NCBI GenBank assembly: GCA_965655095.1
Contig: OZ296648.1
Span: 50,592,001 to 50,656,000, forward strand
DNA length: 64,000 nt
DNA from: Haplodiscus bocki
Taxonomy: Eukaryota
Direction: 5' to 3'
Part shown: in pieces, positions 1-58,200 of the stretch
How positions within the stretch are numbered: position 1 is the stretch's first letter
How the letters are laid out: every line of letters starts with the position of its first letter
Notes under the pieces: model-generated
What the model was told of the DNA's origin: nothing
Databases searched by the model: none
What the model saw: only the letters and a program-made list of their open reading frames with translations
Translations under genes and position numbers: made by a program

Positions 1-3000
1 CAACTTTCATTGGAGCATTGGATGAGAAAGTCAGTATTTTCCACCCTGCATGAAAGTCTTGACGGTCCGAAACTTCCGAAAGGGTCTGCTAGTTTAGATA
101 AATTCCGAAATTCACATTCAATTATCTCGGTAACTACAGGTTTGATTTCTCTCAACAGCGTGATAATCTCAAAACGTATACTTAGAAAATAGATTTCGAT
201 TGAGCATCATTGAATAAGTCCACTTCATCAAAAACCGGATAATAACAATTATTGACGGTGGTTTTATTACTGGTTTCTCACGGTATTCAAAAACATATTT
301 TTCCAGAACTACAGGCTTGATGTCTTCACCACGCTCTCACTCGAACAATTTTTATTTTTGGAAGAAATTGCGACTGAAATGTCCTTCAAGGTGTTCATTA
401 AATCAGAATTCTCATAATGTGAAAGGTGCAAAGGAGCTATTAGCTTTGATTCATCTTGAGATACAAAATCAGTTTTTCTCCTGAATAGCCATTATAAAAA
501 CTTTTTTTCAAAGTCTCAGTGGACAGACTTTTAATTTGCTTAGGAACTTTTTGTTTTAAAAAGCAATGATTTGATTCCTTGAGCAGGAACCTTGTTCTCT
601 TGAAAAAGAGAACGAAAGGTTGCTTTTTTTGACTTTTCCACTTTGTGTTAACTCATGGTTCTCATTAGCCGCTGACTAATGTGCGCGCATTTTTCAGCGA
701 AGAAATTCTAGTGTTCTGAAAACTACATATCTATGAATGTTTCCGCGGTTTGGAAGCAACAAGCAACAGATTCGAATCCTTCTTTCGGCCTGAATTTTAC
801 CATTTTTAGATAGTCAAAAAGGCAATCTTTCTTTTCGCCAAAAAACTAAAGTTTTACAACAGAATGCAGCAATTTTCGATCATTGGGCTCACTGTTGTCG
901 GAAAAAGTTTCCAGTTCTTATGTCATTTGAAGCAAATAGTTTTTTTGCGTTTTTTTCCAAAAAAGTGGGCAAAAATCGATTTTTCAAAGAAACCGTATGA
1001 AGTTGAAAATTTGTAAATCTGCTGAAAAGTAAAGTTGTAGGTGGTAATAGGTAATTTTTTTGAATTTCTTGTTGCCAGTTTTTCCAATACGCTTGTTTCT
1101 AGTGGGTCAAAACAATTTGACTTCAAAAAAATTGGTAGTCGAACTTGTAGTTTTCTAATCCTCAGACTGAAGAAAGCCAGAAAACGCATTCAGTTCCGAA
1201 ATTCTTCTTTGTTGCTACAATTTCTTGCCCATAGGTGCCACGCTCTTTTCCTTCATCGTTGTGTCAATCAGAACGCTTGCACTTGCTAAGCATATTCCTT
1301 CAATATGGTGGTCCAGTGCCTTGTGACCAGATGGTACTAAATTTCCTAAGGTCCTATCAATATTGATCTACTTCGAATTTGAAATTTTCATCCCAGCAAA
1401 TACAGAATTGATTTATTCAATCATGGTCTGAACAGAAAAGATCATTTACAAGATAGGGCGTAAGTGCAAGTCAAACTGATTGTTTTGAAGTATGTGTCAA
1501 GTTCCTGTTCGTCCAGAGTTTGACGAAAAAGTTCTGAGACAAGTTTCCCTCGATATTCAATCTCTAACAACTCAGAAACTACAGTTTTGATTTCTCTCAA
1601 TGGGGACTCAATCGAAAAGTTTTTCATGTAGACGAGCATTCAGTTACAAAGTGGCTGAGTTTCAATCTTGAACCACAGTCATGATAAACCGAAAAATCCC
1701 TAAGTGCTACTGATAATGTGTCTTCTTGAGAAAAGGATTTACGTCTCTCGAAAAGAACAGGTTTAAGTTCTGCCTTTGGGGTGTCAACGTAAGACTTTAT
1801 ACTTTCATTATAGCATTGGATGAGAAAGTCATTGGTTTTCCACCCTGCATGAAAATCCTGACGTTCCGAAATTTCCGAAAGGTTTCTTCTAGTTTTGATG
1901 AATTTCGAAATTCACATTCAATTATCTCGGTATTTGCAGGTTTGATTTCTCTCAACAGCGTGATAGTCTCAAAACGTATACTTAGAAAATAGATTTCGAT
2001 TGAGCATCATTGAATAAGTCCACTTCATCAAAATCCGGATAATAACAATTATTGACGGTGGTTTCATCACTGGTTTCTGACGGTATTCAAAAACATTGTT
2101 CCAGAACTACAGGCTTGATGTCTTCACCACGCTCTCACTCGAACAATTTTTACTTTGGAAAGCAATCTCGACTGAAAGTTTCTTGGAGTTGTTCCCTAAA
2201 TCAGAATTCTGATAAAGTGAATAGTGCAAAGGAGCTATTAGTTTTGATTCATCTGGAGATACAAATTCTCTTTTTGTCCTCAATGGCCAGCACAAATTCT
2301 TTCTTCAAAGTTTCTTTGGACAGACACTTATTTTGCTGTGGAACTTTAGTTTTTAAAAGCAATGACTTGGTTAGTTGAGCTGGGACCTTCATATTTCGAA
2401 AAAGAGAACAAACTCTTCTTTTTTTGACGTTCCTACTATTTGCTATCTCATGGTTCGCGATAGCCGCTGATTAATGTGGGCGCATTTCTCGACGAAGAAA
2501 TTTTAGTGCTTCGAAAATTAGATATGCATCAACGGTTCCGGGGTTTGGAAGCAACAAGCAGCAGATTCAAATCCTGCTATGGGCCTGAATTTGTCCATTT
2601 TTAGATACTCGTTAACGCATCCTTTTTTTAACCAAAAAACTAATATTTTCTGAACAAAAGTCAACGCTTTTTGATCATTGGGTTCCATTTTGTCGGAAAA
2701 AGCTTCCAGTTGCTACTGCATTTGAGGCAAATAGGTTTTTTGCAGATTTTTTCAAAAAAGTGTGCAAAAATCATTTTTCCAAAGAACACTTATGAAGTTG
2801 AATGTTCGTAAAACTGCTGAAAATAAGAAATGTAGGTGGTAATAAGTAATTTTTTTGAATTTCTGATAGCCGGTTTTTCCAATACCTTTGTTCCTACTGT
2901 GTCAAAACACTTTGACTGCAAAAAAATTGGTAGTGGAGCATATAATATATAATCCTCTGATCCTCAGACTGAAGAAAACCAGAAAGCGCATTCAGTTTTG

Positions 3001-6000
3001 AACTTCTTCTTTGTTGCTACTATTACTTCTCCGAAATTCCAAAGCTCTTTTTTTCATCTATGTCTCAATCCCAACGCTTGCACTTGCTACGCGTACTTCT
3101 TCAATATGATGGTCCACTGCCTTTTGACCAGATAGTACTAATTTTCCTAAAGTGCTATCATTATTGATCCACTTCGAATTTGAATATTTCATCTCAGCAA
3201 CTCCAGAATTGATTTATTCTATCATGGTCTGAACAGAAAAATTCGTATACGTAAATACGCATCAATTCAAGAAAATTTTTGTTTTGAAGCATGTGTCAAG
3301 TTCCTGTTTTTCCAGAGTTTGAGGAAAAGGTACTGAGACAAGTTTTCCTCGTTTTTCAATCAAACAACACAGAAACTACAGGTTTGATTTCTTTCAATGG
3401 GGACTCAATCGAAACTTTTTATGTAAACGAGCATTCAGTTACAAAGTGGCTGAGTTTCAATCTTGAACCACAGTCATGATAAACCGAAAAATCCCTAAGT
3501 GCTACTGATAATGTGTCTTCTTGAGAAAAGGATTTACGTTTCTCGATAAGTACTGGTTTAATTTCTGTCGTTGGGGTCTCAACGTAAGACTTTCTACTTT
3601 CATTGCAGTTATTGGATGAGAAAATCATTGATTTTCCACCCCGAGTGAAAATTTTGTCGGTCCAAAGTCTCCGAAAATTTCTGCTGGTTTTGATAAATCT
3701 CGAAAATCACATTCAATTATCGCGGTACCTACAGGTTTGATTTCTCTCAACAGCGTGATAATCTCAAAACGTATACTTAGAAAATAGATTTCGATTGAGC
3801 ATCATTGAATAAGTCCACTTCATCAAAATCCGGATAATAACAATTATTGACGGTGGTTTCATCACTGGTTTCTGACGGTATTCAAAAACATATTATTCCA
3901 GAACTACAGGCCTGATGTCTTCACCAAGCTCTCACTCGAACAATTTTTACTTTGGGAAGAAATTTCGACTGAAATGTCCTTCAAGGTGTTCATTAAATCA
4001 GAATTCTCATAATGTGAAAGGTGCAAAGGAGCTATTAGCTTTGATTCATCTTGAGATACAAAATCAGTTTTTCTCCGGAATAGCCAGCATAAAAACTTTT
4101 TTTCAAAGTCTCAGTGGACAGACATTTAATTTGCTTAGGAAATTTTGTTTTAAAAAGCAATGATTTGATTCCTTGAGCAGGAACCTTGTTCTCTTCAAAA
4201 AGAGAACAAAAGGTTGCTTTTTTTGACGTTTCTACTTTGTGTTAACTAATGGTTCTCAACAGCCGCTGACTAATGTGCGCGCATTTTTCAGCGAAGAAAC
4301 ACTAGTGTTCTGAAAACTACATATCTATGAATTTTTCCGCGGTTTGGAAGCAACAACCAACAGATTCGAATCCTTCTTTCGGCCTTAATTTTACCATTTT
4401 TAGATAGTCAAAAAGGCAATCTTTCTTTTCGCCAAAAAACTAAAGTTTTACAACAGAATGCAGCAATTTCCGATCATTGGGCTCACTGTTGTCGGAAAAA
4501 GTTTCCAGTTCTTATGTCATTTGAAGCAAATAGTTTTTTTGCGTTTTTTTCCCAAAAAGTGGGCAAAAATCGATTTTTCAAAGAAAGCGTATGAAGTTGA
4601 AAATTTGTAAATCTGCTGAAAAGTATAGTTGTAGGTGGCAATAAGTATTTTTTCTGAATTTCTGGTTGCCAGCTTTTCCATTACGCTTGTTTCTAGTGGG
4701 TCAAAACAATTTGACTTTTTGACTTCAAAAAAATTGGTCGTCGAACTTGTAGTTTTCTAATCCTTAGACTGAAGAAAACCAGAAAGCGCATTCATTTCTG
4801 AAATTCTTCTTCGTTGCTACAATTTCTTACCCATAAGTCCCACGCTCTTTTCCTTCATCGTTGTCTCAATCAGAACGCTTGCACTTGCTAAGCATATTTC
4901 TTCAATATGGTGGTCCAGTGCCTTGTGACCAGATAGTACTAAATTTCCTAAGGTCCTATCAATATTGATCTAATTCGAATTTGAAATTTTCATCCCAGCA
5001 AATACAGAATTCATTTATTCAATCATGGTCTGAACAGAAAAGATCATTTACAAGATAGGGCGTAAGTGCAAGTCAAACTGATTGTTTTGAAGTATGTGTC
5101 AAGTTACTGTTCGTCCAGAGTTTGACGAAAAAGTTCTGAGACCAGTTTCCCTCGATATTCAATCTCTAACAACTCAGAAACTACAGTTTTGATTTCTTTC
5201 AATGGGGACTCAATCGAAAAGTTTTTTATGTAGACGAGCATTCAGTTACAAAGTGGCTGAGTTTCAATCTTGAACCACAGTCATGATAAACCGAAAAATC
5301 CCTAAGTGCTACTGATAATGTGTCTTCTTGAGAAAAAGATTTACTTCTCTCGAAAAAAACAGGTTTAAGTTCTGCCATTGGGGTCTCAAAGTAAGACTTT
5401 ATACTTTCATTATAGCATTGGATGAGAAAGTCATTGGTTTTCCACCCTGCATGAAAATCCTGACGTTCCGAAATTTCCGAAAGGTTCTGCTAGTTTTGAT
5501 AAATTTCGAAATTCACATTCAATTATCTCGGTAACTGCAGGTTTGATTTCTCTCAACAGCGTGATAGTCTCAAAACGTATACTTAGAAAATAGATTTCGA
5601 TTGAGCATCATTGAATAAGTCCACTTCATCAAAATCCGGATAATAACAAATATTGACGGTGGTTTCATCACTGGTTTCTGACGGTATTCAAAAACATTGT
5701 TCCAGAACTACAGGCTTGATGTCTTCAACACGCTCTCACTCGAACAATTTTTACTTTTGGAAGAAATTTCATCTGAAATGTCCTTCAAGGTGTCCATTAA
5801 ATCAGAATTCTGATAATGTGAATGGTGCAAAGGAGCTATTAGTTTTGATTCATCTGGAGATACAAATTCTCTTTTTGTCCTCAATGGCCAGCATAAATTC
5901 TTTCTTCAAAGTTTCTTTGGACAGACACTTATTTTGCTGTGGAACTTTAGTTTTTAAAAGCAATGACTTGGTTAGTTGAACTGGGACCTTCATTTTCGAA

Positions 6001-9000
6001 AACGAGAACAAACTCTTCTTTTTTTGACGTTCCTACTATTTGCTATCTCATGGTTCGCGATAGCCGCTGATTAATGTGGGCGCATTTCTCGACGAAGAAA
6101 TTTTAGTGCTTTGAAAATTAGATATGCATCAACGGTCCGGGGTTTGGAAGCAACAAGCAGCAGATTCAAATCCTGCTATGGGCCTGAATTTGTCCATTTT
6201 TAGATACTCGTTAACGCATTCTTTTTTTAACCAAAAAACTAATATTTTCTGAACAAACTTCAGCGCTTTTTGATCATTGGGTTCCATTTTGTCGGAAAAA
6301 GTTTCCAGTTGCTACTGCATTTGAGGCAATTAGGTTTTTCGCAATTTTTTTCAAAAAAGTGTGCAAAAATCATTTTTCCAAAGAACCCGTATGAAGTTGA
6401 AAGTTCGTAAAACTGCTGAAAATAAGAAATGTAGGTGGTAATAATTGATTTTTTTGAATTTCTGGTAGCCGGTTTTTCCAATACCTTTGTTCCTACTGTC
6501 TCAAAACACCCTGACTGCGAAAAAACTGGTAGTGGAGCATATAATCCTCTGATCCTCAGACTGAAGAAAACCAGAAAGCGCATTCAGTTTTGAACTTCTC
6601 CTTTGTTGCTACTATTACTTCTCCGAAGTTCCAAAGCTCTTTTTTTCATCTATGTCTCAATCCCAACGATTGCACTTGCTACGCGTACTTCTTCAATATG
6701 ATGGTCCACTGCCTTTTGACCAGATAGTACTAATTTTCCTAAAGTGCTATCATTATTGATCCACTTCGAATTTGAATATTTCATCTCAGCAACTCCAGAA
6801 ACGATTTATTCTATCATGGTTTGAACAGAAAAATTCCTATACGTAAATACGCATCAATTCAAGAAAAATTTTTGTTTTGAAGCATGTGTCAAGTTCCTGT
6901 TTTTCCAGAGTTTGAGGAAAAGGTACTGAGACAAGTTTTCCTCGTTTTTCAATCAAACAACACAGAAACTACAGGTTTGATTTCTTTCAATGGGGACTTA
7001 ATCGAAAACGTTTTTATTGTAGACGAACATTCAGTTACAAAGTGGCTGAGTTGCATTCTCGAACCACATTCATAAGAAACCGAAAAACCCTTAAGTGCTA
7101 CTGATAATGTGTCTTCTTGAGAAAAGGATTTACGTCTCTCGATAAGAACAGGTTTAATTTCTGCCATTGGGGTCTCAACGTAAGACTTTATACTTTCATT
7201 AGAGCATTGGATGAGAAAGTCATTGGTTTTCCACCCTGCATGAAAATCCTGACGTTCCGAAATTTCCGAAAGGTTCTGCTAGTTTTGATAAATTTCGAAA
7301 TTCACATTCAATTATCTCGGTAACTGCAGTTTTGATTTCTCTCAACAGCGTGATAATCTCAAAACGTATACTTGGAAAATAGATTTCGATTGAGCATCAT
7401 TTAATTAGTCCACTTCATCAAAATCCGGATAATAACAATTTTTGACGTTGGTTTTCTCACTGGTTTCTCACGGTATTCAAAAACATATTATTCCAGAACT
7501 ACAGGCTTGATGTCTTCACCACGCTCTCACTCGAACAATTTTTACTTTTGGAAGAAATTTCGACTGAAATGTCCTTCAAGGTGTTCATTAAATCAGAATT
7601 CTCATAATGTGAAAGGTGCAAAGGAGCTATTAGCTTTGATTCATCTTGAGATACAAAATCATTTTTTCTCCTGAATAGCCAGCATAAAAACTTTTTTTCA
7701 AAGTCTCAATGGACAGACATTTATTTTGCCTAGGAACCTTTTGTTTTAAAAAGCAATGATTTGATTCCTTGAGCAGGAACCTTGTTCTCTTGAAAAACAG
7801 AACAAAAGGTTGCTTTTTTTTGACGTTTCTACTTTGCGTTAACTCATGGTTCTCAATAGCCGCTGACTAATGTGTGCGCATTTTTCAGCGAAAAAACACT
7901 AGTGTTCTGAAAACTATATATCTATGATTGTTTCCGCGGTTTGGGATCAACAAGCAACAGATTCGAATCCTTCTTTCGGCCTTAATTTTACCATTTTTAG
8001 ATAGTCAAAACGGCAATCTTTCTTTTCGCCAAAAAACTAAAGTTTTACAACAGAATGCATCAATTTTCGATCATTGGGCTCACTGTTGTCAGGTAAACTT
8101 TCCAGTTCTTATGTCATTTGAAGCAAATAGTTTTTTTGCGTTTTTTTCCAAAAAAGTGGGCAAAAATCAATTTTTCAAAGAAACCGTATGAAGTTGAAAA
8201 TTTGTAAATCTGCTGAAAAGTATAGTTGTAGGTGGTAATAAGTAATTTTTTTGAATTTCTGGTTGCCAGCTTTTCCAATACGTTTGTTTCTAGTGGGTCA
8301 AAACGATTTGACTTCAAAAAAATTGGTAGTCGAACTTGTAGTTTTCTAATCCTCAGACTGAAGAAAACCAGAAAGCGCATTCATTTCTGAAATTCTTCTT
8401 CGTTGCTACAATTTCTTTCCCATAGGTGCCACGCTCTTTTCCTTCATCGTTGTGTCAATCAGAACGCTTGCACTTGCTAAGCATATTTCTTCAATATGGT
8501 GGTCCAGTGCCTTGTGACCAGATAGTACTAAATTTCCTAAGGTCCTATCAATATTGATCTAATTCGAATTTGAAATTTTCATCCCAGCAAATACAGAATT
8601 CATTTATTCAATCATGGTCTGAACAGAAAAGATCATTTACAAGATAGGGCGTAAGTGCAAGTCAAACTGATTGTTTTGAAGTATGTGTCAAGTTCCTGTT
8701 CGTCCAGAGTTTGACGAAAAAGTTCTGAGACCAGTTTCCCTCGATATTCAATCTCTAACAACTCAGAAACTACAGTTTTGATTTCTTTCAATGGGGACTC
8801 AATCGAAAAGTTTTATATGTAGACGAGCATTCAGTTACAAAGTGGCTGAGTTTCAATCTTGAACCACAGTCATGATAAACCGAAAAATCCCTAAGTGCTA
8901 CTGATAATGTGTCTTCTTGAGAAAAGGATTTACGTCTCTCGAAAAGAACAGGTTTAAGTTCTGCCATTGGGGTCTCAACGTAAGACTTTATACTTTCATT

Positions 9001-12000
9001 ATAGCATTGGATGAGAAAGTCATTGGTTTTCCACCCTGCATGAAAATCCTGACGTTCCGAAATTTCCGAAAGGTTCTGCTAGTTTTGATAAATTTCGAAA
9101 TTCACATTCCATTATCTCGGTAACTGCAGGTTTGATTTCTCTTAACGTCGTGATATTCTCAAAACGTATACTTAGAAAATAGATTTCGATTGAGCATCAT
9201 TTAATTAGTCCACTTCATCAAAATCCGGATAATAACAATTTTTGACGGTGGTTTTCTCACTGGTTTCTCACGGTATTCAAAAACATATTATTCCAGAACT
9301 ACAGGCTTGATGTCTTCACCACGCTCTCACTCGAACAATTTTTACTTTTGGAAGAAATTTCGACTGAAATGTCCTTCAAGGTGTTCATTAAATCAGAATT
9401 CTCATAATGTGAAAGGTGCAAAGGAGCTATTAGCTTTGATTCACCTTGAGATACAAAATCATTTTTTCTCCTGAATAGCCAGCATAAAAACTTTTTTTCA
9501 AAGTCTCAATGGACAGACATTTAATTTGCCTAGGAACTTTTTGTTTTAAAAAGCAATGATTTGATTCCTTGAGCAGGAACCTTGTTCTCTTGAAAAAGAG
9601 AACAAAAGGTTGCTTTTTTTGACGTTTCTACTTTGCGTTAACTCATGGTTCTCAATAGCCGCTGACTAATGTGTGCGCATTTTTCAGCGAACAAACACTA
9701 GTGTTCTGAAAACTATATATCTATGATTGTTTCCGCGGTTTGGGAGCAACAAGCAACAGATTCGAATCCTTCTTTCGGCCTTAATTTTACCATTTTTAGA
9801 TAGTCAAAAAGGCAATCTTTCTTTTCGCCAAAAAACTAAAGTTTTACAACAGAATGCATCAATTTTCGATCATTGGGCTCACTGTTGTCAGAAAAACTTT
9901 CCAGTTCTTATGTCATTTGAAGCAAATAGTTTTTTTGCGTTTTTTTCCAAAAAAGTGGGCAAAAATCAATTTTTCAAAGAAACCGTATGAAGTTGAAAAA
10001 TTGTAAATCTGCTGAAAAGTATAGTTGTAGGTGGTAATAAGTAATTTTTTTGAATTTCTGGTTGCCAGCTTTTCCAATACGTTTGTTTCTAGTTGGTCAA
10101 AACGATTTGACTTCAAAAAAATTGGTAGTCGAACTTGTAGTTTTCTAATCCTCAGACTGAAGAAAACCAGAAAGCGCATTCATTTCTGAAATTCTTCTTC
10201 GTTGCTACAATTTCTTTCCCATAGGTGCCACGCTCTTTTCCTTCATCGTTGTGTCAATCAGAACGCTTGCACTTGCTAAGCATATTTCTTCAATATGGTG
10301 GTCCAGTGCCTTGTGACCAGATAGTACTAAATTTCCTAAGGTCCTATCAATATTGATCTACTTCGAATATGAAATTTTCATCCCAGCAATTACAGAATTG
10401 ATTTATTCAATCATGGTCTGAACAGAAAAGATCATTTACAAGATAGGGCGTAAGTGCAAGTCAAACTGATTGTTTTGAAGTATGTGTCAAGTTCCTGTTC
10501 GTCCAGAGTTTGACGAAAAAGTTCTGAGACAGTTTCCCTCGATATTCAATCTCTAACAACTCAGAAACTACAGTTTTGATTTCTTTCAATGGGGACTCAA
10601 TCGAAAAGTTTTTTATGTAGACGAGCATTCAGTTACAAAGTGGCTGAGTTTCAATCTTGAACCACAGTCATGATAAACCGAAAAATCCCTAAGTGCTACT
10701 GATAATGTGTCTTCTTGAGAAAAGGATTTACGTCTCTCGAAAAGAACAGGTTTAAGTTCTAACATTGGGGTCTCAACGTAAGACTTTATACTTTCATTAT
10801 AGCATTCGATGAGAAAGTCATTGGTTTTTCACCCTGCATGAAAATCCTGACGTTCCGAATTTTCCGAAAGGTTCTGCTAGTTTTGATAAATTTCGAAATT
10901 CACATTCCATTATCTCGGTAACTGCAGGTTTGATTTCTCTTAACAGCGTGATATTCTCAAAACGTATACTTAGAAAACAGATTTCGATTGAGCATCTTTG
11001 AGTTAGACCACTTCATCCAAACCCGGATAATAAAAAATATTGACGGTGGTTTCATCAATGGTTTCTGACGGTATTCAAAAACATATTTTTCCAGAACTAC
11101 AGGCTTGATGTCTTCACCACGCTCTCATTCGAACAATTTTTACTTTTGGAAGAAATTTCGGCTGAAATGTCCTTCAAGGTGTTCGTTAAATCAGAATTCT
11201 GATAATGTGAATGGTGCAAAGGAGCTATTAGTTTTGATTCATCTGGAGATACAAATTCTCTTTTTGTCCTCAATGGCCAGCATAAATTCTTTCTTCAAAG
11301 TTTCTTTAGACAGACACCTATTTTGCTGTGGAACTTTAGTTTTTAAAAGCAATGACTTGGTTAGTTGAACTGGGACCTTCATTTTCGAAAACGAGAACAA
11401 ACTCTTCTTTTTTTGACGTTCCTACTATTTGCTATCTCATGGTTCGCGATAGTCGCTGATTAATGTGGGCGCATTTCTCGACAAAGAAATTTTAGTGCTT
11501 TGAAAAGTAGATATGCATCAACGGTTCCGGGGTTTGGAAGCAACAAGCAGCAGATTCAAATCCTGCTATGGGCCTCAATTTGTCCATTTTTAGATACTCG
11601 TTAACGCATTCTTTTTTTAACCAAAAAACTAACATTTTCTGAACAAAATTCCGCGCTTTTTGATCATTGGGTTCCATTTTGTCGGAAAAAGTTTCCAGTT
11701 GCTACTGCATTTGAGGCAAATAGGTTTTTCGCAATTTTTTTCAAAAAAGTGTGCAAAAATCAATTTTCCAAAGAACCCGTATGAAGTTGAAAGTTCGCAA
11801 AACTGCTGAAAATAAGAAATGTAGGTGGTAATAAGTAATTTTTTTGAATTTCTGATAACCAGTTTTTCCAATACCTTTGTTCCTACTGTCTCAAAACACC
11901 CTGACTTCGAAAAAACTGGTAGTGGAGCATATAATCCTCTGATCCTCAGACTGAAGAAAACCAGAAAGCGCATTCAGTTTTGAACTTCTTCTTTGTTGCT

Positions 12001-47200: not shown

Positions 47201-50200
47201 ATTCATTCTTCACAGTCTCCATTGACAGATAATTAATTTGCTGAGGAATTCCGGTTTTAAAAAACATTGACTTTGTTACTTGACCGGGAATCCTGATAGT
47301 TGGAAAAAGACAACGAATTGCAATTTTTTTGACGTTCTCCTTTTCCTTCCTTCCCTTCAACTCATGGTTCTTTAATTTCGCTGACTAATGAGCGCGCATT
47401 TTTCGGCGAATAAAGTTCAGTGCTTTGAAAAGTACATACGCATGAAAGTTTCCGCGGTTTACAAGCAACAAGCAGCAGATTCGAGTCCTGCTTTCGGCTT
47501 AAGTTTTTCCATTTTTAGATACTGGTTAACGGATTCTTCTTTTTTTTTAAACGAAAAACAGATGTTTTCTCAACAAAAGTCAGCGATTTCCAATCAATGG
47601 GCTCTGTTTTGTCCGAAAAATTTCCAGTTTCTACAGTAATTGAATCGAGTAGGTTTTTCGCGTTTTTTTTCACAAAAGTGGGCAAAAAGTGATTTTCCAA
47701 GGGATACGTATGAAGTTGAAAATATGTAAATCTGCTGAAAAGTATAATTGTAGGTCTTAATAACTAATTTTTTTGCATTTTTGGTTGCCAGTTTTTCCAG
47801 TACGTTTGTTTCTACTGTGTCAAAACAATTTGTCTCCAGAAAAACTGGTAAAGGAACATAAAGTCCTTGATCTTCAGAGTGAAGAAAGCTAGAAAACGCA
47901 TTCAGTCTCGAAATTCTTCTTGGTTACTAGTATATCTTCTCCAAAAGTCCAACACTCTTTTCTTTCCTCTATGTCTCAATCAGGTGGTTGGTACTTATTA
48001 AGCGTACTCCTTCAAAAACGGTGGTTCAGAGCCTTGTGAACGGCTAGTACTAATTTGCCGAAGCTGCAATCATTATTGAGCTGTCTCGTATTCGAAATCT
48101 TCGTCTCAGCAACTATTGGTTTGATCTTTTCCATCAAGGTCTGAAGTGTAAAAGTCACCTACGTAAAAGGGAGCAAAAACCAAAGAAAGAACTTTTTGCA
48201 ACATGTATCAAGTACCTGTTTGTCCAGATTTTGAGAAAAAGGTACTTAGACATGATTGTCCCGGTTTGCAAACTCCAACAACTCAAAAACTATAAATTTG
48301 TTTTCTTGCATTTGGGACTCAATTGACAACATTTTTCTTCGAGGGGCGCATTTGGTGAAAAACTGGCCATTTTTGATGCTTGCATCACATACATGTGGAA
48401 TCGAGAAAAAACCTAAGAAGCTACTGGTAATGTGACTTCTTGAGAGACGAAATTACGTTGCTCGATAACTACGGGTTTAAATTCTGTCATCTGGAATCTC
48501 TATAGAATGTTTTTCACTTTCAATGGAGCACTGGTTGGAAAAGTCTTCGATTTTCATCCTTGTATCAAAATCCTGATAGTACGAGTTTTCCGAAAGGTTC
48601 AACTATTTTTGATAAAGCTTGATATCCACATTCAATTTTCTCGGTAACGAACGATTTGATTTTTTCACTGGCGTAGCAATCTTGAAATGTATACAGAAAT
48701 GATGTTGATTGAAACTCCTTGAAACATCAAAATCCGGATAATAACAAAAAGCGAAGGTGGTTCTATCATTGATTTATCGCGGTATTCAAAATAAAACTTT
48801 TGTGTAACTACAGGTTTGATACCCTCATCAAGCCTTCATTGGAACCATTTTTACTTTTGGAAGAGAGTTCGATAGAATTTTCATTTTAGATGTTCTTTAA
48901 ATCAGAATCTTGAGAGTTTGATTGGCGCAAAAGGAACTTTTGGTTCTGATCCATCTTGAGAAACAAGTTGCCTTTTCTCAATAACGGCCAGTTTAAATTC
49001 ATTCTTCACAGTCTCCATTGACAGATAATTAATTTGCTGAGGAATTCCGGTTTTAAAAAACATTGACTTTGTTACTTGACCGGGAATCCTGATAGTTGGA
49101 AAAAGACAACGAATTGCAATTTTTTTGACGTTCTTCTTTTCCTTCCTTTCCTTCAACTCATGGTTCTTTATTTTCGCTGACTAATGAGCGCGCATTTTTC
49201 GGCGACTAAATTTCAGTGCTTTGAAAAGTACATACGCATGAAAGTTTCCGCGGTTTACAAGCAACAAGCAGCAGATTCGAGTCCTGCTTTCGGCTTAAGT
49301 TTTTCCATTTTTAGATACTGGATAACGGATTCTTCTTTTTTTTAAACGAAAAACAGATGTTTTCTCAACAAAAGTCAGCGATTTCCAATCAATGGGCTCT
49401 GTTTTGTCCGAAAAATTTCCAGTTTCTACAGTAATTGAATCGAATAGGATTTTCGCATTTTTTTTTTCACAAAAGTGGGCAAAAAGTGATTTTCCACGGG
49501 ATACGTATGAAGTTGAAAGTATGTAAATCTGATGAAAAGTACAAATGTATGTGTTAATAACTAGTTTTTTTGAATTTCTGGTGGTCAGTTTTTCCAGTAC
49601 CTTCGTTTCTACTGTGTGAAAACAATTTGACTCCAGAAAAACTGGTAAAGGAACATAAAGTCCTTGATCTTCAGAGTGAAGAAAGCTAGAAAACGCATTC
49701 AGTCTCGAAATTCTTCTTGGTTACTAGTATATCTTCTCCAAAAGTCCAACACTCTTTTCTTTCCTCTATGTCTCAATCAGGTGGTTGGTACTTATTAAGC
49801 GTACTCCTTCAAAAACGGTGGTTCAGAGCCCTGTGAACGGCTAGTACTAATTTGCCGAAGCTGCAATCATTATTGAGCTGTCTCGTATTCGAAATCTTCG
49901 TCTCAGCAACTATTGGTTTGATTTTTTCCATCAAGGTCTAAAGTGTAAAAGTCACCTACGTAAAAGGGAGCAAAAACCAAAGAAAGAACATTTTGCAACA
50001 TGTATCAAGTTCCTGTTTGTCCAGATTTTGAGAAAAAGGTACTTAGACATGATTGTCCCGGTTTGCAAATTCCAACAACTCAAAAACTATAAATTTGTTT
50101 TCTTGCAATTGGGACTCAATTGAGAACATTTTTCTTCGAGGGGCGCATTTGGTGAAAAAGTGGCCATTTTTGATGCTTGCATCACATACATGAGGAATCG

Positions 50201-52400
50201 AGAAAAAACCTAAAAAGCTACTGGTAATGTGACTTCTTGAGAGACGAAATTACGTTGCTCGATAACTACGGGTTTAAATTCTGTCATCTGGAATCTTTAT
50301 AGAATGTTTTTCACTTTCAATGGAGCACTGGTCGGAAAAGTCTTCGATTTTCATCCTTGTATCAAAATCCTGATAGTACGAGTTTTCCGAAAGGTTCAAC
50401 TATTTTTGATAAAGCTTGATATCCACATTCAATTTTCTCGGTAACGAACGATTTGATTTTTTCACTGGCGTAGCAATCTTAAAATGTATAGAGAAATGAT
50501 GTTGATTGAAACTCCTTGAAACATCAAAATCCGGATAATAACAAAAAGCGAAGGTGGTTCTATCATTGATTTATCGCGGTATTCAAAATAAAAATTCTGT
50601 GTAACTACAGGTTTGATACCCTCATCAAGCCTTCATTGGAACCATTTTTACTTTTGGAAGAGAGTTCGATAGAATTTTCATTTTAGATGTTCTTTAAATC
50701 AGAATCTTGAGAGTTTGATTGGCGCAAAAGGAACTTTTGGTTCTGATCCATCTTGAGAAACAAGTTGCCTTTTCTCAATAACGGCCAGTTTAAATTCATT
50801 CTTCACAGTCTCCATTGACAGATAATTAATTTGCTGAGGAATTCCGGTTTTAAAAAACATTGACTTTGTTACTTGACCGGGAATCCTGATAGTTGGAAAA
50901 AGACAACGAATTGCAATTTTTTTGACGTTCTTCTTTTCCTTCCTTTCCTTCAACTCATGGTACTTTATTTTCGCTGACTAATGAGCGCGCATTTTTCGGC
51001 GACTAAATTTCAGTGCTTTGAAAAGTACATACGCATGAAAGTTTCCGCGGTTTACAAGCAACAAGCAGCAGATTCGAGTCCTGCTTTCGGCTTAAGTTTT
51101 TCCATTTTTAGATACTGGATAACGGATTCTTCTTTTTTTTAAACGAAAAACAGATGTTTTCTCAACAAAAGTCAGCGATTTCCAATCAATGGGCTCTGTT
51201 TTGTCCGAAACATTTCCAGTTTCTACAGTAATTTAATCAAGTAGGTTTTTCGAATTTTTTTTTCACAAAAGTGGGCAAAAAGTGATTTTCCACGGGATAC
51301 GTATGAAGTTGAAAGTATGTAAATCTGATGAAAAGTACAAATGTATGTGTTAATAACTAATTTTTTGAATTTCTGGTGGTCAGTTTTTCCAGTACCTTCG
51401 TTTCTACTGTGTGAAAACAATTTGACTCCAGAAAAACTGGTAGAGGAACATAAAGTCCTTGATCTTCAGAGTGAAGAAAGCTAGAAAACGCATTCAGTCT
51501 CGAAATTCTTCTTGGTTACTAGTATTTCTTCTCCAAAAGTCCAACACTTTTTTCTGTCCTCTATGTCTCAATCAGGCGGTTTGTACTTATTAAGCGTATT
51601 CCTTCAAAAATGGTGGTTCAGTGCCTTGTGAACGGATATTACTACTTTTCCGAAGCTCCAATCAATATTGAGCTGTCTCGTATTCGAAATCTTCGTCTCA
51701 GCAACTATTGGTTTGATTTTTTCCATCAAGGTCTGAACGGTAAAAGCCACCTACGTAAAAGGAGATAAAAACCAGAGAAAGAACTTTTTTCAACAAGTAT
51801 CAATTTCCTGTTTGACCAGAGTTTGAGAAAAAGGTACTTAAACAAGATTCTCTGGGTTTGCAAACTCAAACAACTCAAAAACTAAAACTTTGATTTCTTC
51901 CAATTGGGACACAATTGAAAACATTTTTCTTCGAGGGGCGCAATTGTTGAAAAAGTGGCCATTTTTCATGCCTGCATCACATACATGAGAAATCGAAAAA
52001 ACCTAAAGAGCTACTGACAATGTGTCTTCTTGGGAAACGAAATTACGTTCCTCAATAACTACAGGTTCAATTTCTGTCATCCGGAATCTCTATAGAATGT
52101 TTTTCACTTTCAATGGAGCACTGGTTGGAAAAGTCTTCGATTTTCATCCTTGTATCAAAATCCTGATAGTACGAGTTTTCCGAAAGTTTCAACTAGTTTC
52201 GATAAAGCTTGATATTCACATTCAATTTTCTTGGTAACGAACGGTTTGATTTCTTCATTGGCGTAGCAATGTTAAAATGTATATTTAGAGAAAAGATGTT
52301 GACTGAAACTCCTTGAGTAAAATCTGTTCATCAAAATCCAGATAACAACAAAAAGCGAAGGTGGTTCTATCATTGATTTAACGCGGTATTCAAAATATTA
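41250..52400. repeat. C subfamily domain 2 (~6 units)
   Basis: The same C diagnostics are present. Units at ~46.5-51.5 kb share private variants (ggtttacaagc, gattcgagtcc, gagttcgatagaattttc) at ~1797 bp spacing. Confidence 0.87.
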
Positions 52401-55400
52401 CTTCTCCGTAACTACAGGTTTGTTATACTCATCAAGCTTTCATTCGGACAATATTTACTTGTGGAAAATATTTCGATTGAAAAATCACTTGAAGTGAAGT
52501 GTCCCTAAATCAGAATTTTGAGAATCTGATTGGTGTAAAGGGGGCTATTAGTTTTGATTCATCTTGAGATACAAATTACCTTTTCCCCAGAGCGGTCAGC
52601 ATAAATTCTTTCTTCAGAGTTTCACTTGACAGATAATTAGTTTGCTGAGGCTTTTTAGTCTTGAAAAGCATTGATTTTACTCCTTGACCGGGTATGTTGA
52701 TAGTTGAAAAAAGACTACTTTTTCTGACGTTCTTCCTTTCCTTCAACTCATGGTTCTCAATTACCGATGACTAATGCGCGTGCAACTTGTGGAGAGGAAG
52801 TTTTAGTGCCTCGAAAATTACATAAGTATTAAAGTCTCCGAGGTTATGAAGCAACAAGCAGCAGGTTCGAATCCTGCATTCGGCCTTACTTTTTACAGTT
52901 TTAGACGCTGGTGAACGCCTTCTCTTTTTTAAACGAAAAAAAAACAATGTTTTCCCGACAAAATTCAATGCCTTTCAATCATTGGATTCAATGTCGTCGT
53001 GAAAATTTCCCTGTTTCTACCATAATTGAAGCAAACAGGTTTTCCGCCATCTTTTCCGGAAAAGCGGATAAAAATCGATTCTCCAAAAAGGCCGTAAGAA
53101 GTTGAAAAATTGTATATCTGCTAAAAAATATGGTTGAACGTGTAAATAGTCCATTTTGTTTTCAATTTTTGTTAAAAGTTTTTCCACTATCCTTGTTTCT
53201 CCAGGATAGTGGACCAATTTATTTCGAAGAAACTGCTATTTGAACATGTAGTTCTCTGATCCTCAGATTGAGAAAAGCAGGAAAGTGCATTTAGTTTTGA
53301 ACTTCCTCTTTGTTGCTACTCTTTTTTCTCTAAAAGTCCAAGGCTCATTTCTTTCATCTACTTCTCAGTAACAAGGTTTGTTCTTGTTAGGAGTACTCCT
53401 TCAAAAAATGGTGGTCCAGTGTTTTTTTACCGGATGGTACTAAACTTCCAAAGTGCTATCATTTTTTATCTATCTCGAATTCGAACTTTTCGTCTCACCA
53501 ACTGCAGAATTGATTTATTCCATCATGGTCTGAACAGAAAAGTTCTTATACGTAAAGGGGGATAAGTTTCAGACAACCATTTGTTTTGAAGCTTTGAAGC
53601 ATGATTCAAGTTCCTGTTTGTCCAGAGTTTGGAGAATTGGTACTGAGATAAGATTTTCTCGATTGTCAATCTCAAACAGCTCAGAAACTGCAGGTTTGAC
53701 TTCTTCCATTTGGGACTCAATCGAAAATTTTTTTCTTCGAGAGGTGTATTTGGTGAAAAACTGGCCAATTTTCATAGTTGCATCACATTCATGAAAAACC
53801 GAAAACTCCTAGAGTGCTACTAATAATGTGTCTTCTCAAGAAATGAAAATACGTTCCTCCATAAATACAGCTTTAAATACAGTCATCGGGAATCTCTAAG
53901 GAAAATTTTACACATTCAAGGGAACATTGGCTGAAAAAGTTAAAGATTTTCATCCTTGTATCAAAATCCTGCATTTCCGAAAATCTGAAAGGTTCCACTA
54001 TTTTTGGTACAACTCGATATTCACATTCATTTATTTCGGGAAATACTTGTTTGATTTCGTTCATCAGCGTGGCAATCCGAAAACGTGTACTTAGAGAAAG
54101 CACTTCAATTGAAACTCATTGGAATCGTTCTTTGCTCCAAAATCCAGATAATAACAAAATTCGAAGATTATTTTATTATCGATTTCTCACGGTTTTCAAA
54201 AGCATATTTATCCGAAACCACAGACTTGATTTCATTATCAAGTTTCCATTCGAGCATTTTTTGTTTGTGGAATAAACTTCGATTGAAATGTTGTTTAAGG
54301 TGTTTTTCAAATCAGAATTTTGACAATCTGAATGCTGCAAAACGAGTTATCTTTTCTGATTCATCTTGAGATACAAATTCTTTTCTTCTCCTGAACAGCC
54401 AGCTTCAGTTTCTTCACCAAGATCTCAAAACAAAAACCTTTAAAGGCCGAGGAACTATAGTTTTGAAAAACATTGATTTCGGTCCAATCGTTCGAATTTT
54501 GAATATTCGAAAGAGCCAAAGAACTGCTATACTATTTGATGTTCCTCGTTATCTTGAATTGTTGATTTCCATAACCGCTGAGACGGGTGCGCGCATTTTG
54601 CAGAGAAGAACCGCTGGTGCAGTGAAGAACGCATATGTATGGGCGTCAACGCAGAAAGGAGGCAACAAGAAGCAGATTATATTTCTGCTGTCGACCTTAA
54701 ATTAACAACTTTTAGATACTCGTTAACGCATTCTTTTCTAATACCAAAAAACAAAGGCTTTCTCGAAGAAATTCAACGTCTTTCAAACATTGGGCTCCAT
54801 TTCATCGGAAAACTTATCCTTTTTCCACCGTAATTGAAGCAAATTCTTTTTTTGCCACCTTTATCAGAAAAGCGTGTAAAAATCGAGTTGCCAAAAAAAA
54901 CGTAAGAAGTTGAAAGTCTGTAAATCTGATGATCAATGTAGTTGAAGGTGAAAAAACTGATATTTTCTTCATTGTTGGGTTATCAGTTTTTCCATTATCT
55001 TTGTTTTTCCAGAGTCCAAAAACGTTGTTTCGAAAAAAAACTGCTATTGGAACATGTAGTTCTTTGATGCTCGGGTTGAGAATTACCAGAAAGCGCGTTT
55101 AGTTTTGAGCTGTTTCTTTGTTGCTGCAGATTCTTCTTTGTTTCCGATACCTCTTCTCTCAAAACCAGTGCTCATTTCTTTTATCTATGTCTGAAAAAAC
55201 GGCTTGTACTTGTTAAGAGTATTCAATGAAACAAAGGTGGTCCAGTGCCTAGTGACCAGATAGTACTAGACTTCCCAAAAGTGCTATCATTACTGATCTA
55301 TTTCCTATTCGAACTCTTCGTCTCAGCAACTACAGGTTTCATTTGTTACATCAGAGTCTGAACGGAAAAACGTACACGTGTGGAAAGCAAAATACTTTCA

Positions 55401-58200
55401 ACAAATTTTGTTTCGAGCCATATGTGAAGTTCCTGGTTGTCAAGTGTTTTAGAAAAAGCTACTGAAACAAGTTGTTTTCGACTTCCAAACTGAGACAACT
55501 CAGAAATTACCGTTTTGATTTCTTCCACTCGTGACTCCATGGAAGCCATTCTTCTTGTAGAGGAGCTTTCAGCTGAAAACGTGCAGAAACTCGTGCTTGC
55601 ATCACATACAATCGAATCCGACAAATCATCAAGCGCTACTGATAATATGTCTTCTCGAGAATCGAATATAAAATGCTCGGTAACCACGGGTTTGATTTTT
55701 GTCTTCGGGGTTCCTACGGAACACTTTACAAATTAATTGGAGCATTGAATGGGAAATTTCTGATTTTCATCCCTGCATCAAAGATTTGACAGTCGGAAAG
55801 TTCCCAAATGTTACTTCAGTTTTGATAAATTTCGACATTCACATTCATTTAATTCGGTCAGTAGAGGTTTGATTTCTTTCATCAGTGTCTGAATCGAGAA
55901 AAAGGTACGTAGAAAAAAAGTATCGATTAGAAACTCAATGAATTAGTTATTTGCATCAAAATCAGGATAATAGCATTCATTGTACGTGGTTTTATTTTTG
56001 GTTTCTTTCGCCATTCACAATCGAATTCCTCCGTAACTACAGCTTTGATTTGATCCAAAAAGCTTTGAGTCTGACAATTTTTATTTATGCAAAAAAAACC
56101 GATTGAAATGCAATTAATTGTGTTTTTTGGATCAGATTTATGAGAATCCGAACCGTGCAAGAAGCGCTCATAATTCTGATTCATCTTGGTTTAAAAATTG
56201 TATTTTCCCTTTACTGCCAGCAAAATTTCCTTCATCAGAGTGTCACTTGATAGAAATTTAGTTTGCTGGGAAACTTTCGTTTTAAAAGGCATTGATTTTG
56301 TTCCTTGCTCCTGAAACTTGATAGCTCAAAAATGACAACGATTCGCTATTTCTTCTGACGTTTTTCCTTTTCTTCAACTCATGGTTCTCCATATCTGCTG
56401 ACTAATGCGCAAACATTTTCGGGAGCAGATTTTTGGTGATTTGAATATTACTTACGTACGAACGTCGCTGCGGTTACGAACCAGCAAGTAGCAATTTGGA
56501 ATCCTGTTGTCAGCCCTAATTTTGCCCATTTGTATAGAAATTCGTTTTTAAAATTTTAGAAACCGAAAAATTCGGGTTTTCTCGACAAAACTTGGCGTTT
56601 ACGGATGATTGTTCTCTTTTCGTTTGGAAAAATTGTTCAATTTCTGCAGTAATTGAAGCAAAATGACTTTCCCCGATGCCTCCCAGAAAATTTGGTAAAA
56701 ATGGATTTTCCAAAAAAGCCGTAAGGTGTTGAAAGTTTGTAAATCTGCTCAATATTGTTGTTGAATTTGTAGACAATTGTTTCTTTTCATATTGAGGTTA
56801 TCAGCTTTTCCAATATATTTCATTCCCGGAATCATTAAACGCTGTTTCGAAGAAACTGCTATTAGAACGTGTAGTTCTCTGATCCCCAGATTCAGAAATA
56901 CCAGAAAGCGCATTTAGTTTTGAGCTGCTTCTTTCTTGCAGCAATTTTTTCACTGTTGCTGCTATTTTCTCTCTAAAGTTCAAGGCTCATTTTTTTCATC
57001 TATGTCTCAATAAGAGGGCTTGTACTTGTTAAGAGTACTCCCTCAAAAAATGGTGGTCCAGTGCTTTGTGACCGGATAGTAGTAAATTTGAGAAAATGCT
57101 ATCAATATTGATCTCTCTCGAATTCGATCTCTTCGTCTCAGCAATAACACGATTGATTTTCTCCATCATGGTCTGCACGGAAAAATCCACAAGCGCTGAG
57201 GGGGATATTTTTCAGGAAAAATTTGTTTTGAAAAAAATTTATGTGTTAACAAGTTCCTGAGTTTGAGAAAAACATACTCAGTCAAGATTCTCTCGATTTT
57301 CAATCTCGCACAACTCAGAAACTACAGGTTTGATCTCTTACACTGAGGACCTAATTGAAAACTTTTTTCTTGGAGAGGACCTTTCGGTTAAAGTTGGCTG
57401 AGTTCCATGCTTGCATCACATTCATGAGAATCCGAAAAATCATAAAGTGCTACTCATAATGTGTCTTCTTGAGAAAAGATTTTATGTTTCTCGCTAACTA
57501 CAGGTTTAATTTGTGACATCGGGGTCTCAAAGAAAAGCTTTATTTTTTATTCGGAGCATGAGATGAAATATTCATTGATTTTTATCCCTGCGTCAAACTC
57601 CTGGCAGTCCCAAACTTCCGAAATGTTCTACTCGTTTTGATATGTCTCGATACTCACATTCAATTATCTCGACAACTATAGGTTTAATTCCTTTCATCAG
57701 CGTGGCAATCGAGAAATTATACTAAGAGATGATATCAACTGAAACTCGTTGAGTTAGCTCTTTGCTTCAAAACCCGGGTAAAAACAAAGTTCGATGTTGG
57801 TTTTCTCGTTGATTTCTCAAGTTATTCAGGATCATACTAATCTGTAACTACATGCTTGCTTTCTTTATCAAGCTCTCGATCGAACAAATTCTCCTTGTGA
57901 AAGAGAATTCGATTGAAAAGTCAATTAAAGTGATCTTTAAATCAAAAATCTGATAATCTGAATGCTGCCAAATGAGCTATTGTTTCTGATTCATCTTGCG
58001 ATACAAATTCTTTTCTTTTCCTGAATGGCCAGCATCAATTCCTTCAGAAAAGGTATCATAAAAGACCTTTGACTGCCGAGGAAAGGTTGTTTTTACAAAG
58101 ACTGATTTCGTTCTTGCATTCGAATTTTGATTTTTTGAAAAAACCAGAGATTTGCTATTGTTTCTGGTGTTCCTCGTATACTTGACTCATTGTTCTCCGT
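52400..58200. repeat. Three strongly diverged singleton ~1.81-1.82 kb units (transition layer)
   Basis: The landmarks stay collinear (52766, 54577, 56397, 58205; spacings 1811, 1820, 1808), but no near-identical full-length copy of these units exists elsewhere in the window. Confidence 0.85.

What the first reader, a model, noticed from the sequence alone, without database searches (positions are those of the whole stretch)
1..58200. The 1.8 kb unit is a hidden ~10 x 180 bp higher-order repeat
Seen: the core aactacaggtttgatttct recurs inside each unit at 175-179 bp steps (1399, 1578, 1754, 1933, then ~2107), and upstream context also aligns. aggagctattagctttgattcatcttgaga (~432) resembles aagtgctactgataatgtgtcttcttgaga (~1702) and aagtgctatcattattgatccacttcga (~3150), each about 50-55 bp before a core. 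The mean unit length of 1798 divided by 10 is about 180 bp. Known: satellites with mononucleosome-sized monomers are typical of centromeric and pericentromeric DNA (primate 171 bp alpha satellite with its higher-order repeats, Arabidopsis 178 bp repeat). No sequence homology to those families is claimed. Inference: an old ~180 bp satellite was frozen into a decamer that then became the amplification unit. Half of the sub-monomers are only weakly recognisable by eye.
Basis: partly seen in the sequence, partly recalled or inferred. Interest (0 to 1): 0.75.

Follow-up and report, generated by a model that had tools for sequence, protein, structure and literature searches.

The report
Transposon-derived satellite with 177-bp sub-repeats
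The 1.8-kb repeat does contain old ~177-base sub-repeats, but only eight (six whole, two partial) plus about 0.5 kb of unrelated sequence, because the unit is a re-copied inner piece of a common rolling-circle jumping element; this is a known way for satellite DNA to arise.

Summary
The core motif recurs 103 times, all on the + strand, against 0.08 expected by chance. Self-similarity peaks at lag 177 (z 5.5), with harmonics at 354, 530 and 707.

The unit is not 10 x 180 bp. A monomer profile finds 7-8 adjacent sub-repeats in every unit across the window, never 10. About 480-500 bp of each unit shows no monomer signal above shuffled controls.

The reason is that the unit is positions ~92-1853 of a dispersed ~2.9-kb non-coding element found on all large chromosomes. 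That element has the hallmarks of Helentron-type non-autonomous elements (HINE/DINE-1-like):
- 11-12-nt subterminal inverted repeats
- a palindrome near the 3' end
- no target-site duplication, and mostly T-ending 5' flanks
- about 13 internal ~177-bp slots

Each satellite slot is closest to the same-numbered slot of the element. The unit joins slot 7 to the element's left arm at a 5-bp microhomology (GACTT). A copy on another chromosome shows an in-register 7-slot expansion inside intact element ends.

So this is a transposon-derived macrosatellite at least 175 kb long, a new member of a known kind. Nothing tested bears on a centromere role. Earlier notes of this scan report similar ~172-177-bp hidden repeats elsewhere in this genome.

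The parts
1..64000 (+). Tandem array of ~1.8-kb units. The last three full units are 1631 bp. The array continues outside the window, at least over C1:50502456-50677835.
1797..3591 (+). Example unit (unit 2, subfamily B), used for the slot coordinates below.
1813..1985 (+). Slot m4: whole ~177-bp monomer.
   Evidence: nhmmer E 2.5e-31. Closest to element slot 4.
1995..2160 (+). Slot m5: whole monomer.
   Evidence: E 4.8e-22. Closest to element slot 5.
2168..2333 (+). Slot m6: whole monomer, the 'sixth' one not used to build the first profile.
   Evidence: E 1e-6 to 4e-10 with the 5-monomer profile. E 9.6e-24 with the rich profile.
2344..2471 (+). Slot m7: partial monomer (profile positions 3-129), cut inside its core motif.
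   Evidence: E 1.1e-10. Every unit in which this slot is fully detected ends at profile position ~117-130.
2464..2475 (+). Unit junction. Element position ~1853 (slot m7) is joined to element position ~92 (left arm) at a shared GACTT-like 5-mer, at window 2468|2469.
   Evidence: Alignment of five satellite subfamilies with seven element copies. End-to-end colinear alignment.
2469..2972 (+). Non-periodic segment derived from the element's left arm (element positions ~92-575). It has no monomer homology.
   Evidence: Colinear with the left arm of dispersed copies. Rich-profile scores are at most 4.4 bits, equal to the shuffled maximum.
2540..2587 (+). Decayed tRNA-like 3' half (T-arm and acceptor-like) inside the left-arm segment. 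It is clearer in the dispersed copy at L015:4313-4355.
   Evidence: Read from the sequence. ARAGORN and Rfam find no tRNA, so this is a resemblance only.
2973..3087 (+). Slot m0: partial or degenerate monomer (profile positions 58-173).
   Evidence: E 2.7e-06 in this unit. E down to 3.5e-10 in other subfamilies and 1e-8 to 3e-14 in element copies, with a profile that excluded m0.
3128..3250 (+). Slot m1: monomer (its 5' third is weakly matched in this unit).
   Evidence: E 5.1e-19.
3266..3419 (+). Slot m2: whole monomer.
   Evidence: E 9.9e-20.
3431..3602 (+). Slot m3: whole monomer, running over the nominal unit boundary.
   Evidence: E 1.4e-27.
58729..63991 (+). 1631-bp variant units with one monomer slot fewer (7 hits instead of 8). 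The ~519-bp non-monomer gap is kept.

Best explanation
The array is a non-coding macrosatellite at least 175 kb long. Its 1.8-kb unit is an internal fragment of a dispersed ~2.9-kb non-autonomous rolling-circle element of the Helentron/HINE type.

The element consists of:
- a ~575-bp left arm
- about 13 ancient, strongly diverged ~177-bp monomer slots, all in one orientation
- a ~70-bp right end

Inferred history: in one copy on this chromosome, a tandem duplication joined slot m7 (element position ~1853) to the left arm (position ~92) at a 5-bp microhomology. The resulting unit holds ~0.5 kb of left arm, partial m0, m1-m6 and two thirds of m7. Unequal crossing-over and block re-duplication then amplified and diversified it into subfamilies that are 72-99% identical. 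Occasional in-register exchange between monomers gave the 1631-bp variant.

Shown: the 177-bp periodicity is inherited from the element. It covers about 73% of the unit. The unit is not a decamer.

No function is indicated; I read it as selfish or neutral repeat DNA.
For: Periodicity and slot count:
- The 177-bp period is real.
- There are 7-8 profile hits per unit and none in a ~0.5-kb gap.

The dispersed element:
- Ten dispersed copies on C1, C2, C3, C5, C6, C8, C9 and C12 are ~74-77% identical to the reference copy, and nine of them share sharp ends ~2.83-2.95 kb apart.
- The 3' half is found on C1-C12, ending at the same terminus.
- The rotated satellite consensus aligns end to end with element positions 92-1853 (67.5% identity, E 5e-148).
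- The element carries 10-13 detectable monomers in register.
- All eight satellite slots are most similar to the same-numbered element slot: 61-65%, against 43-59% for other slots.

The junction:
- It shows GACTT microhomology and is shared by all subfamilies compared.

Element hallmarks:
- An 11-12-nt 5' subterminal repeat, TATTTTCCGTC, is complementary to GACGGAAAATA near the 3' end.
- A palindrome (CGCAGT-gcg-ACTGCG) lies ~9 nt from the 3' terminus.
- Flanks share no duplication, and most 5' flanks end in T.
- These match the published HINE description (PMC4067079; PMC7492417).

Supporting context:
- A complete copy on C3 has slots m1-m7 expanded in register (1221-bp period) between intact element ends.
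- The genome holds at least 147 Helitron_like_N matches, many in long open frames.
- No coding signal: the longest ORF in the first 6 kb (about three units) is 108 aa, and eight ORFs gave no Pfam hit at E up to 1.
Against: - The edges of the C1 array could not be fetched. It is therefore not shown that the array sits between the termini of one element copy.
- No autonomous partner sharing these termini was identified, and no empty site was examined. The Helentron/HINE assignment rests on structural hallmarks only.
- The subterminal repeat is decayed in several copies: 6-9 nt of perfect match in six of the ten.
- The amplification mechanism (unequal crossing-over) is inferred, not shown.
- The left arm could be monomer-derived beyond detection. 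Weak ungapped diagonals at consensus columns 908-1036 scored 44-48, against a null maximum of 53.
Confidence: 0.85

Rival explanations
1. The unit is a pure higher-order repeat of ten ~180-bp monomers of an old free satellite, with half of the monomers merely too diverged to recognise.
For: - 1797/10 is about 180.
- Real 177-bp periodicity with harmonics up to 707.
- Weak ungapped diagonals at columns 908-1036.
Against: - The period is 177, so ten monomers would need 1770 bp with no spare sequence.
- The ~0.5-kb gap gives no hit above the shuffled level with a profile of 12 slots from 12 sequences.
- That gap is colinear with the non-repetitive left arm of a mobile element, directly downstream of its subterminal repeat.
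- No unit in the window has more than 8 hits.
Confidence: 0.04
2. Reverse direction. This array, or one like it, is the source, and the mobile element captured a stretch of it.
For: - Helitron-type elements are known to capture host sequence, including tandem repeats (review PMC12628747).
- The ultimate origin of the element's 13 slots is unknown and may well be an older satellite.
Against: - The element runs from m7 straight into m8-m12 and never shows the m7|left-arm junction.
- The satellite unit contains part of the element's left arm, and its m7 is cut in the core motif.
- Capture from this array would therefore give a different structure.
Confidence: 0.04
3. Same origin from the element, but amplification ran by rolling-circle replication of an excised circle (element-encoded or eccDNA) that was then reintegrated, and not by stepwise unequal crossing-over.
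For: - A circle closed at the GACTT microhomology would have exactly this unit.
- Tandem arrays of truncated Helitrons are attributed to rolling-circle amplification in plants (Xiong et al. 2016, as described in PMC12628747).
- The genome is rich in rolling-circle elements, and earlier notes report head-to-tail chains of them.
Against: - The unit lacks the element's 5' terminus, where Rep would nick, and also its 3' palindrome.
- The published model gives arrays with many 5' ends, which is not seen here.
- The array has deep subfamily structure (67-99% identity), which fits long in-place turnover. That does not exclude a rolling-circle start.
Confidence: 0.2
4. The array is this chromosome's centromeric satellite and binds the centromeric histone.
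For: - Large size (at least 175 kb), nucleosome-length monomers and an interior position at ~50.6 Mb of a 198-Mb chromosome.
- DINE-1-like elements are enriched in drosophilid centromeres and heterochromatin (PMC4067079).
Against: - No chromatin or read data could be obtained.
- Earlier notes list many arrays with ~172-177-bp monomers at several places, including others on this same chromosome.
- Monomers within a unit are only 40-53% alike.
Confidence: 0.1
5. The units are tandemly duplicated protein-coding genes or pseudogenes with a 59-residue repeat (177 = 3 x 59).
For: 177 is divisible by 3. Short minus-strand frames contain recurring 'EIKP'-like strings.
Against: - Stops occur in all six frames of every unit examined, and the longest ORF in the first 6 kb is 108 aa.
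- No Pfam match for eight ORFs at E up to 1.
- Slot spacings of 174-179 are not multiples of 3.
- The parent is a non-coding element.
Confidence: 0.01

Closest known systems
HINE / DINE-1-like non-autonomous Helentrons with central tandem repeats (Thomas et al. 2014, PMC4067079)
   Same: - Subterminal inverted repeats of 11-12 nt, set a few nt in from the 5' end.
- A 3' subterminal repeat followed by a short palindrome close to the 3' terminus.
- No target-site duplication.
- A non-coding element with a central array of tandem repeats in fixed orientation.
   Different: - The central array is long (~13 slots, ~2.2 kb) and very old (slots ~45-55% alike), where published HINEs carry short homogeneous runs.
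- No autonomous partner was linked.
- The rolling-circle elements noted earlier in this genome reportedly carry a GIY-YIG nuclease instead of the Helentron AP endonuclease (earlier notes, untested here).
Cg_HINE elements carrying Cg170-type satellite-like repeats in the Pacific oyster (PMC7492417; review PMC12628747)
   Same: - Monomers of ~170 bp ride inside Helentron-type elements and also occur as expanded arrays.
- Element structure is a left flank, tandem repeats and a ~60-bp right flank with a subterminal repeat and palindrome.
- TT or T-rich insertion sites.
   Different: - In the oyster, the expanded arrays consist of the monomer itself.
- Here the amplified unit is a 1.8-kb composite of eight fixed slots plus 0.5 kb of the left flank, joined out of register.
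Primate alpha-satellite higher-order repeats
   Same: - Nucleosome-length monomers (171 vs 177 bp).
- Diverged monomers in a fixed order form a multi-monomer unit that is homogenised as a whole.
- In-register loss of one monomer gives a variant unit (1631 bp).
   Different: - About 27% of this unit is not monomer-derived.
- The slot order was set in a mobile element, not in the array.
- Slots are far more diverged: 40-53%, against ~60-80% for alpha monomers (the latter from my general knowledge).
- There is no evidence of centromere function.
Tandem arrays of truncated Helitrons in plant genomes (Xiong, Dooner & Du 2016, as summarised in PMC12628747)
   Same: Tandem repetition of a truncated rolling-circle element fragment lacking the 3' terminator.
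   Different: The plant arrays keep the element's 5' end in every unit. This unit lacks the first ~91 bp, including the subterminal repeat.

Membership tests
   Lag 177 at z 5.5, with harmonics. The profile peak exceeds all 200 shuffles.
   7-8 hits per unit in all full-length blocks of the window. A ~0.5-kb gap scores at the shuffled level.
   Units are 72-99% identical to each other. Slots within a unit are 38-53% identical.
HINE (non-autonomous Helentron) | Subterminal inverted repeats of ~11-15 nt, the 5' one a few nt from the terminus | tested here: met
   TATTTTCCGTC and its complement GACGGAAAATA. Perfect over 11-12 nt in 3 of 10 copies and decayed in the others.
HINE (non-autonomous Helentron) | Short palindrome between the 3' subterminal repeat and the 3' terminus | tested here: met
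   A CGCAGT-gcg-ACTGCG-type stem-loop folds in about half of the copies, and the motif is visibly conserved in most. It lies ~9 nt from the end.
HINE (non-autonomous Helentron) | No target-site duplication; insertion in T-rich or TT sites | tested here: inconclusive
   The ten flank pairs share no duplication. 5' flanks mostly end in T, and six of ten 3' flanks start with T. No empty sites were examined.
HINE (non-autonomous Helentron) | No coding capacity; central tandem repeats in one orientation | tested here: met
   10-13 monomer hits per copy. Both-strand scans of the window and of the left arms gave no significant minus-strand hit. The copies themselves were scanned on the element's strand only. 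No ORF with a Pfam hit in the homologous satellite unit.
HINE (non-autonomous Helentron) | An autonomous Helentron with the same termini in the same genome | not tested
   Rolling-circle Rep domains are abundant (147 matches), but their termini were not compared.
Centromeric satellite | Occupancy by the centromeric histone; one such domain per chromosome | not testable with these tools
   No chromatin data.

The most novel reading that the evidence does not exclude
One ancient Helentron-type family, with ~13 fixed nucleosome-length slots, is the common seed of many or most of the 'hidden' ~172-177-bp higher-order satellites that this scan has noted across this (reportedly coral) genome. Arrays arise repeatedly from dispersed copies, both in register (C3, 7 slots) and out of register (this array). 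Some of them may have been recruited as centromeres.
Probability: 0.25. Interest if true: 0.55.

Novelty: new member of a known kind. Interest (0 to 1): 0.3.

Why it matters
It corrects a tempting reading. A kilobase unit with a nucleosome-length sub-period looks like an alpha-satellite-style higher-order repeat, but here the sub-period and slot order were inherited from a mobile element, and a quarter of the unit is not repeat-derived.

It adds a clean case, with a mapped breakpoint and microhomology, to the growing evidence that Helitron/Helentron-type elements seed satellite DNA. That evidence so far comes mainly from Drosophila and bivalves. This case is in what earlier notes call a coral genome.

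Practically, similar 'hidden HOR' findings in this genome should first be checked against this element family before they are read as centromere candidates.

Tried and rejected
- Tandem Repeats Finder found nothing. Its longest period is 500, and the monomers are too diverged.
- ARAGORN and Rfam did not support the tRNA-like look of part of the left arm. The only Rfam hit was a chance-level miRNA match at E 0.88.
- Pfam on eight ORFs of the unit gave no hits, so the coding reading was rejected.
- A search with the element's 3' half did not list a copy next to the C1 array among the 40 scored hits. This is uninformative, because thousands of candidates were not scored.
- I first took consensus column ~675 for the element's terminus, because dispersed hits stopped there. 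That was rejected: the flanks added to the query also matched, and the true ends lie ~91 bp upstream and ~1040 bp downstream.
- The iterative profile search was kept honest by quoting E-values from before a segment was included.
- The organism was not identified. 'Coral' comes from earlier notes only.


Full report
**1. What is in the window**

The whole window is one head-to-tail array on the + strand. BLAST of one unit against the window gives 30 full units between 3 and 53908, each 1789-1808 bp. More diverged and rearranged units follow to 64000, the last three full ones 1631 bp long.

Units fall into subfamilies that are 93-99% identical within and only 72-88% identical between. GC is an even 35-38%. 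The window is C1:50592001-50656000 of a 1.5-Gb assembly. Matches to the unit run at least from C1:50502456 to 50677835, so the array is at least 175 kb long, and the upstream units are only 66-74% identical to the query.

**2. The observation**

With up to 3 mismatches it occurs 103 times, all on the + strand, against 0.08 expected, with 3-5 per unit at 174-179-bp steps.

Base-identity autocorrelation over 1-58200 peaks at lag 177 (0.296 against a median of 0.270, z 5.5), with smaller peaks at 352-355 and 529. The 30 units are copies of each other, so I repeated the test on a weighted profile of the aligned units. Peaks at 177-178, 352-355, 530-531 and 706-707 remain. The 177 peak (1.149) exceeds the maximum of 200 column shuffles (1.140). 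The sub-periodicity is therefore more than chance, and the period is 177, not 180.

**3. How many monomers**

It gives only marginal hits for two more, both partial.
- A richer profile, built from 12 slots of the satellite and of dispersed relatives and excluding the slot under test, confirms a partial slot m0. E reaches 3.5e-10 in satellite units and 1e-8 to 3e-14 in dispersed copies.
- Over the whole window this profile gives 263 hits, none on the minus strand. They fall in 37 blocks; every full-length block has 7-8 hits and none has more, and gaps between blocks are 487-687 bp.
- The gap scores at most 4.4 bits, the same as the best of 20 shuffles.
- Ungapped profile diagonals at consensus columns 908-1036 scored 44-48, which lies inside the null range (maximum 53).

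So each unit holds six whole slots, two partial slots and about 0.5 kb with no detectable monomer ancestry. It is not ten monomers.

**4. Why: the unit is a piece of a mobile element**

The genome search with the unit also hit short dispersed copies on other chromosomes. Using one of them with flanks as query showed that the homology runs past the satellite unit on both sides.

Ten copies on C1, C2, C3, C5, C6, C8, C9 and C12 are ~74-77% identical to the reference copy. Nine of them share sharp boundaries about 2.83-2.95 kb apart. The 3' half alone is found on C1-C12 and always stops at the same terminus.

The satellite consensus, rotated to start at column 675, aligns end to end with positions 92-1853 of the copy on C12 (67.5% identity, E 5e-148).

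The element consists of a ~575-bp left arm, then 10-13 detectable ~177-bp monomers in one orientation (slots m0-m12), then a ~70-bp right end.

In a joint alignment the satellite's monomers fall in the same columns as the element's slots m0-m7. Every satellite slot is most similar to the same-numbered element slot: 61-65%, against 43-59% for any other slot. Slots within one satellite unit are only 38-53% alike. The slot order and the divergence between slots therefore predate both the spread of the element and the birth of the array.

**5. The junction**

In all five subfamilies compared, slot m7 is cut inside its core motif (...AACCGCT|GACTT...) and joined to the left arm at ...GCGCA|GACTT.ATGCGCGC.... 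The two parents share GACTT at the join. In unit 2 this is window 2468|2469.

In most units m7 ends at profile position ~117-130; in the largest subfamily (window ~28-50 kb) the detected match stops earlier, at ~81-88. The left-arm segment follows directly in the units checked. This points to a single founding duplication.

The element itself runs from m7 straight into m8. The array therefore derives from the element, not the reverse.

**6. What kind of element**

The 5' end carries TATTTTCCGTC a few nt from the boundary. Its complement GACGGAAAATA lies ~27-37 nt from the 3' terminus and is followed by a palindrome (CGCAGT-gcg-ACTGCG) and a short tail ending ...CTCTTGTT.

The perfect inverted match is 11-12 nt in three copies and decayed in the others. 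Flanks share no duplication, and most 5' flanks end in T.

These are the published hallmarks of Helentron-associated non-autonomous elements (HINE, DINE-1-like): subterminal inverted repeats, a 3' palindrome, a T-rich target, no target-site duplication and often central tandem repeats (PMC4067079; PMC7492417).

The genome has at least 147 matches to the Helitron Rep domain, many in long open frames. I did not link a particular autonomous element to these termini, and I examined no empty sites. The family assignment is therefore structural.

**7. A second, cleaner expansion elsewhere**

On C3 (L016, C3:97.455-97.463 Mb) a copy keeps its 5' part and its 3' half, including the palindrome and terminus. 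Between them, element positions ~717 to ~1938 (seven slots, m1-m7) are repeated at least five times with a 1221-bp period. That is an in-register seven-monomer higher-order repeat growing inside the element.

The C1 array in the window is the out-of-register counterpart, which is why it carries 0.5 kb of arm sequence. The 1631-bp units at the right end of the window have one slot fewer and keep the ~519-bp gap.

**8. Mechanism: shown and inferred**

Shown:
- the origin of the unit from element positions 92-1853
- slot orthology between the satellite and the element
- a junction with microhomology, shared by all subfamilies compared
- absence of coding signal: stops in all frames, a longest ORF of 108 aa in the first 6 kb, and no Pfam hit for eight ORFs

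Inferred:
- a microhomology-mediated tandem duplication in one resident copy
- amplification and turnover by unequal crossing-over and block duplication
- as an alternative start, rolling-circle copying of a circle closed at the microhomology

The published rolling-circle model for truncated Helitron arrays keeps the 5' end in each unit (summarised in PMC12628747). That is not the case here.

**9. What is known**

Satellites arising by expansion of the internal repeats of Helitron/Helentron elements are established in Drosophila and bivalves (PMC7492417; PMC12628747). I found no paper describing this for cnidarians in the two searches made, but those searches were narrow.

I did not verify the organism. 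'Coral' comes from earlier notes of this scan. Those notes also report several other ~172-177-bp hidden higher-order arrays, and Helentron-type elements with other cargo, in this genome. I did not test whether those arrays use the same slots.

**10. Verdict**

- This is a new member of a known kind, of modest interest.
- Not done: the array edges, reads, the autonomous partner, empty sites and any chromatin test.

Noticed in passing
L015:4313-4355 (element left arm); decayed counterpart at window 2540-2587 and at the same phase in other units: A stretch reading like a tRNA T-arm plus 3' acceptor and CCA (GGCGGGTTCGAATCCCGC TGTCGGC CA) sits in the element's left arm. ARAGORN and Rfam call no tRNA there. 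Earlier notes (s1-354056, s1-382578) describe Helentron-type elements with tRNA-derived cargo in this genome, so this may be a remnant of the same habit.
   Followed up: partly
L016 = G000:C3:97452000-97461999 (array continues to ~97462946): A complete copy of the same element has slots m1-m7 repeated at least five times in register (1221-bp period) between intact 5' and 3' element parts. This is a small seven-monomer higher-order repeat growing inside a transposon.
   Followed up: partly
window 25136-53908: Above the 1.8-kb level there is a roughly 14.4-kb super-repeat. Units 15-21 (one C-type, then six D-type) match units 23-29 one to one at 90-96% identity. Units 22 and 30, which close the two blocks, are only 75% alike.
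   Followed up: no
window 1-19744: Subfamilies A and B (84% alike) partly alternate (A B A B A A B A B B B). Same-type units 3.6 kb apart are about 95% identical, which suggests a former dimeric 3.6-kb repeat later broken up by exchanges.
   Followed up: no
G000, genome-wide: At least 147 matches to the Helitron Rep domain, many in uninterrupted frames of 1,600-2,780 codons. They are often clustered in runs ~15-17 kb apart (for example C3:133.75-134.31 Mb, C9:18.63-18.98 Mb, C23). The genome carries many apparently intact rolling-circle elements in arrays.
   Followed up: no
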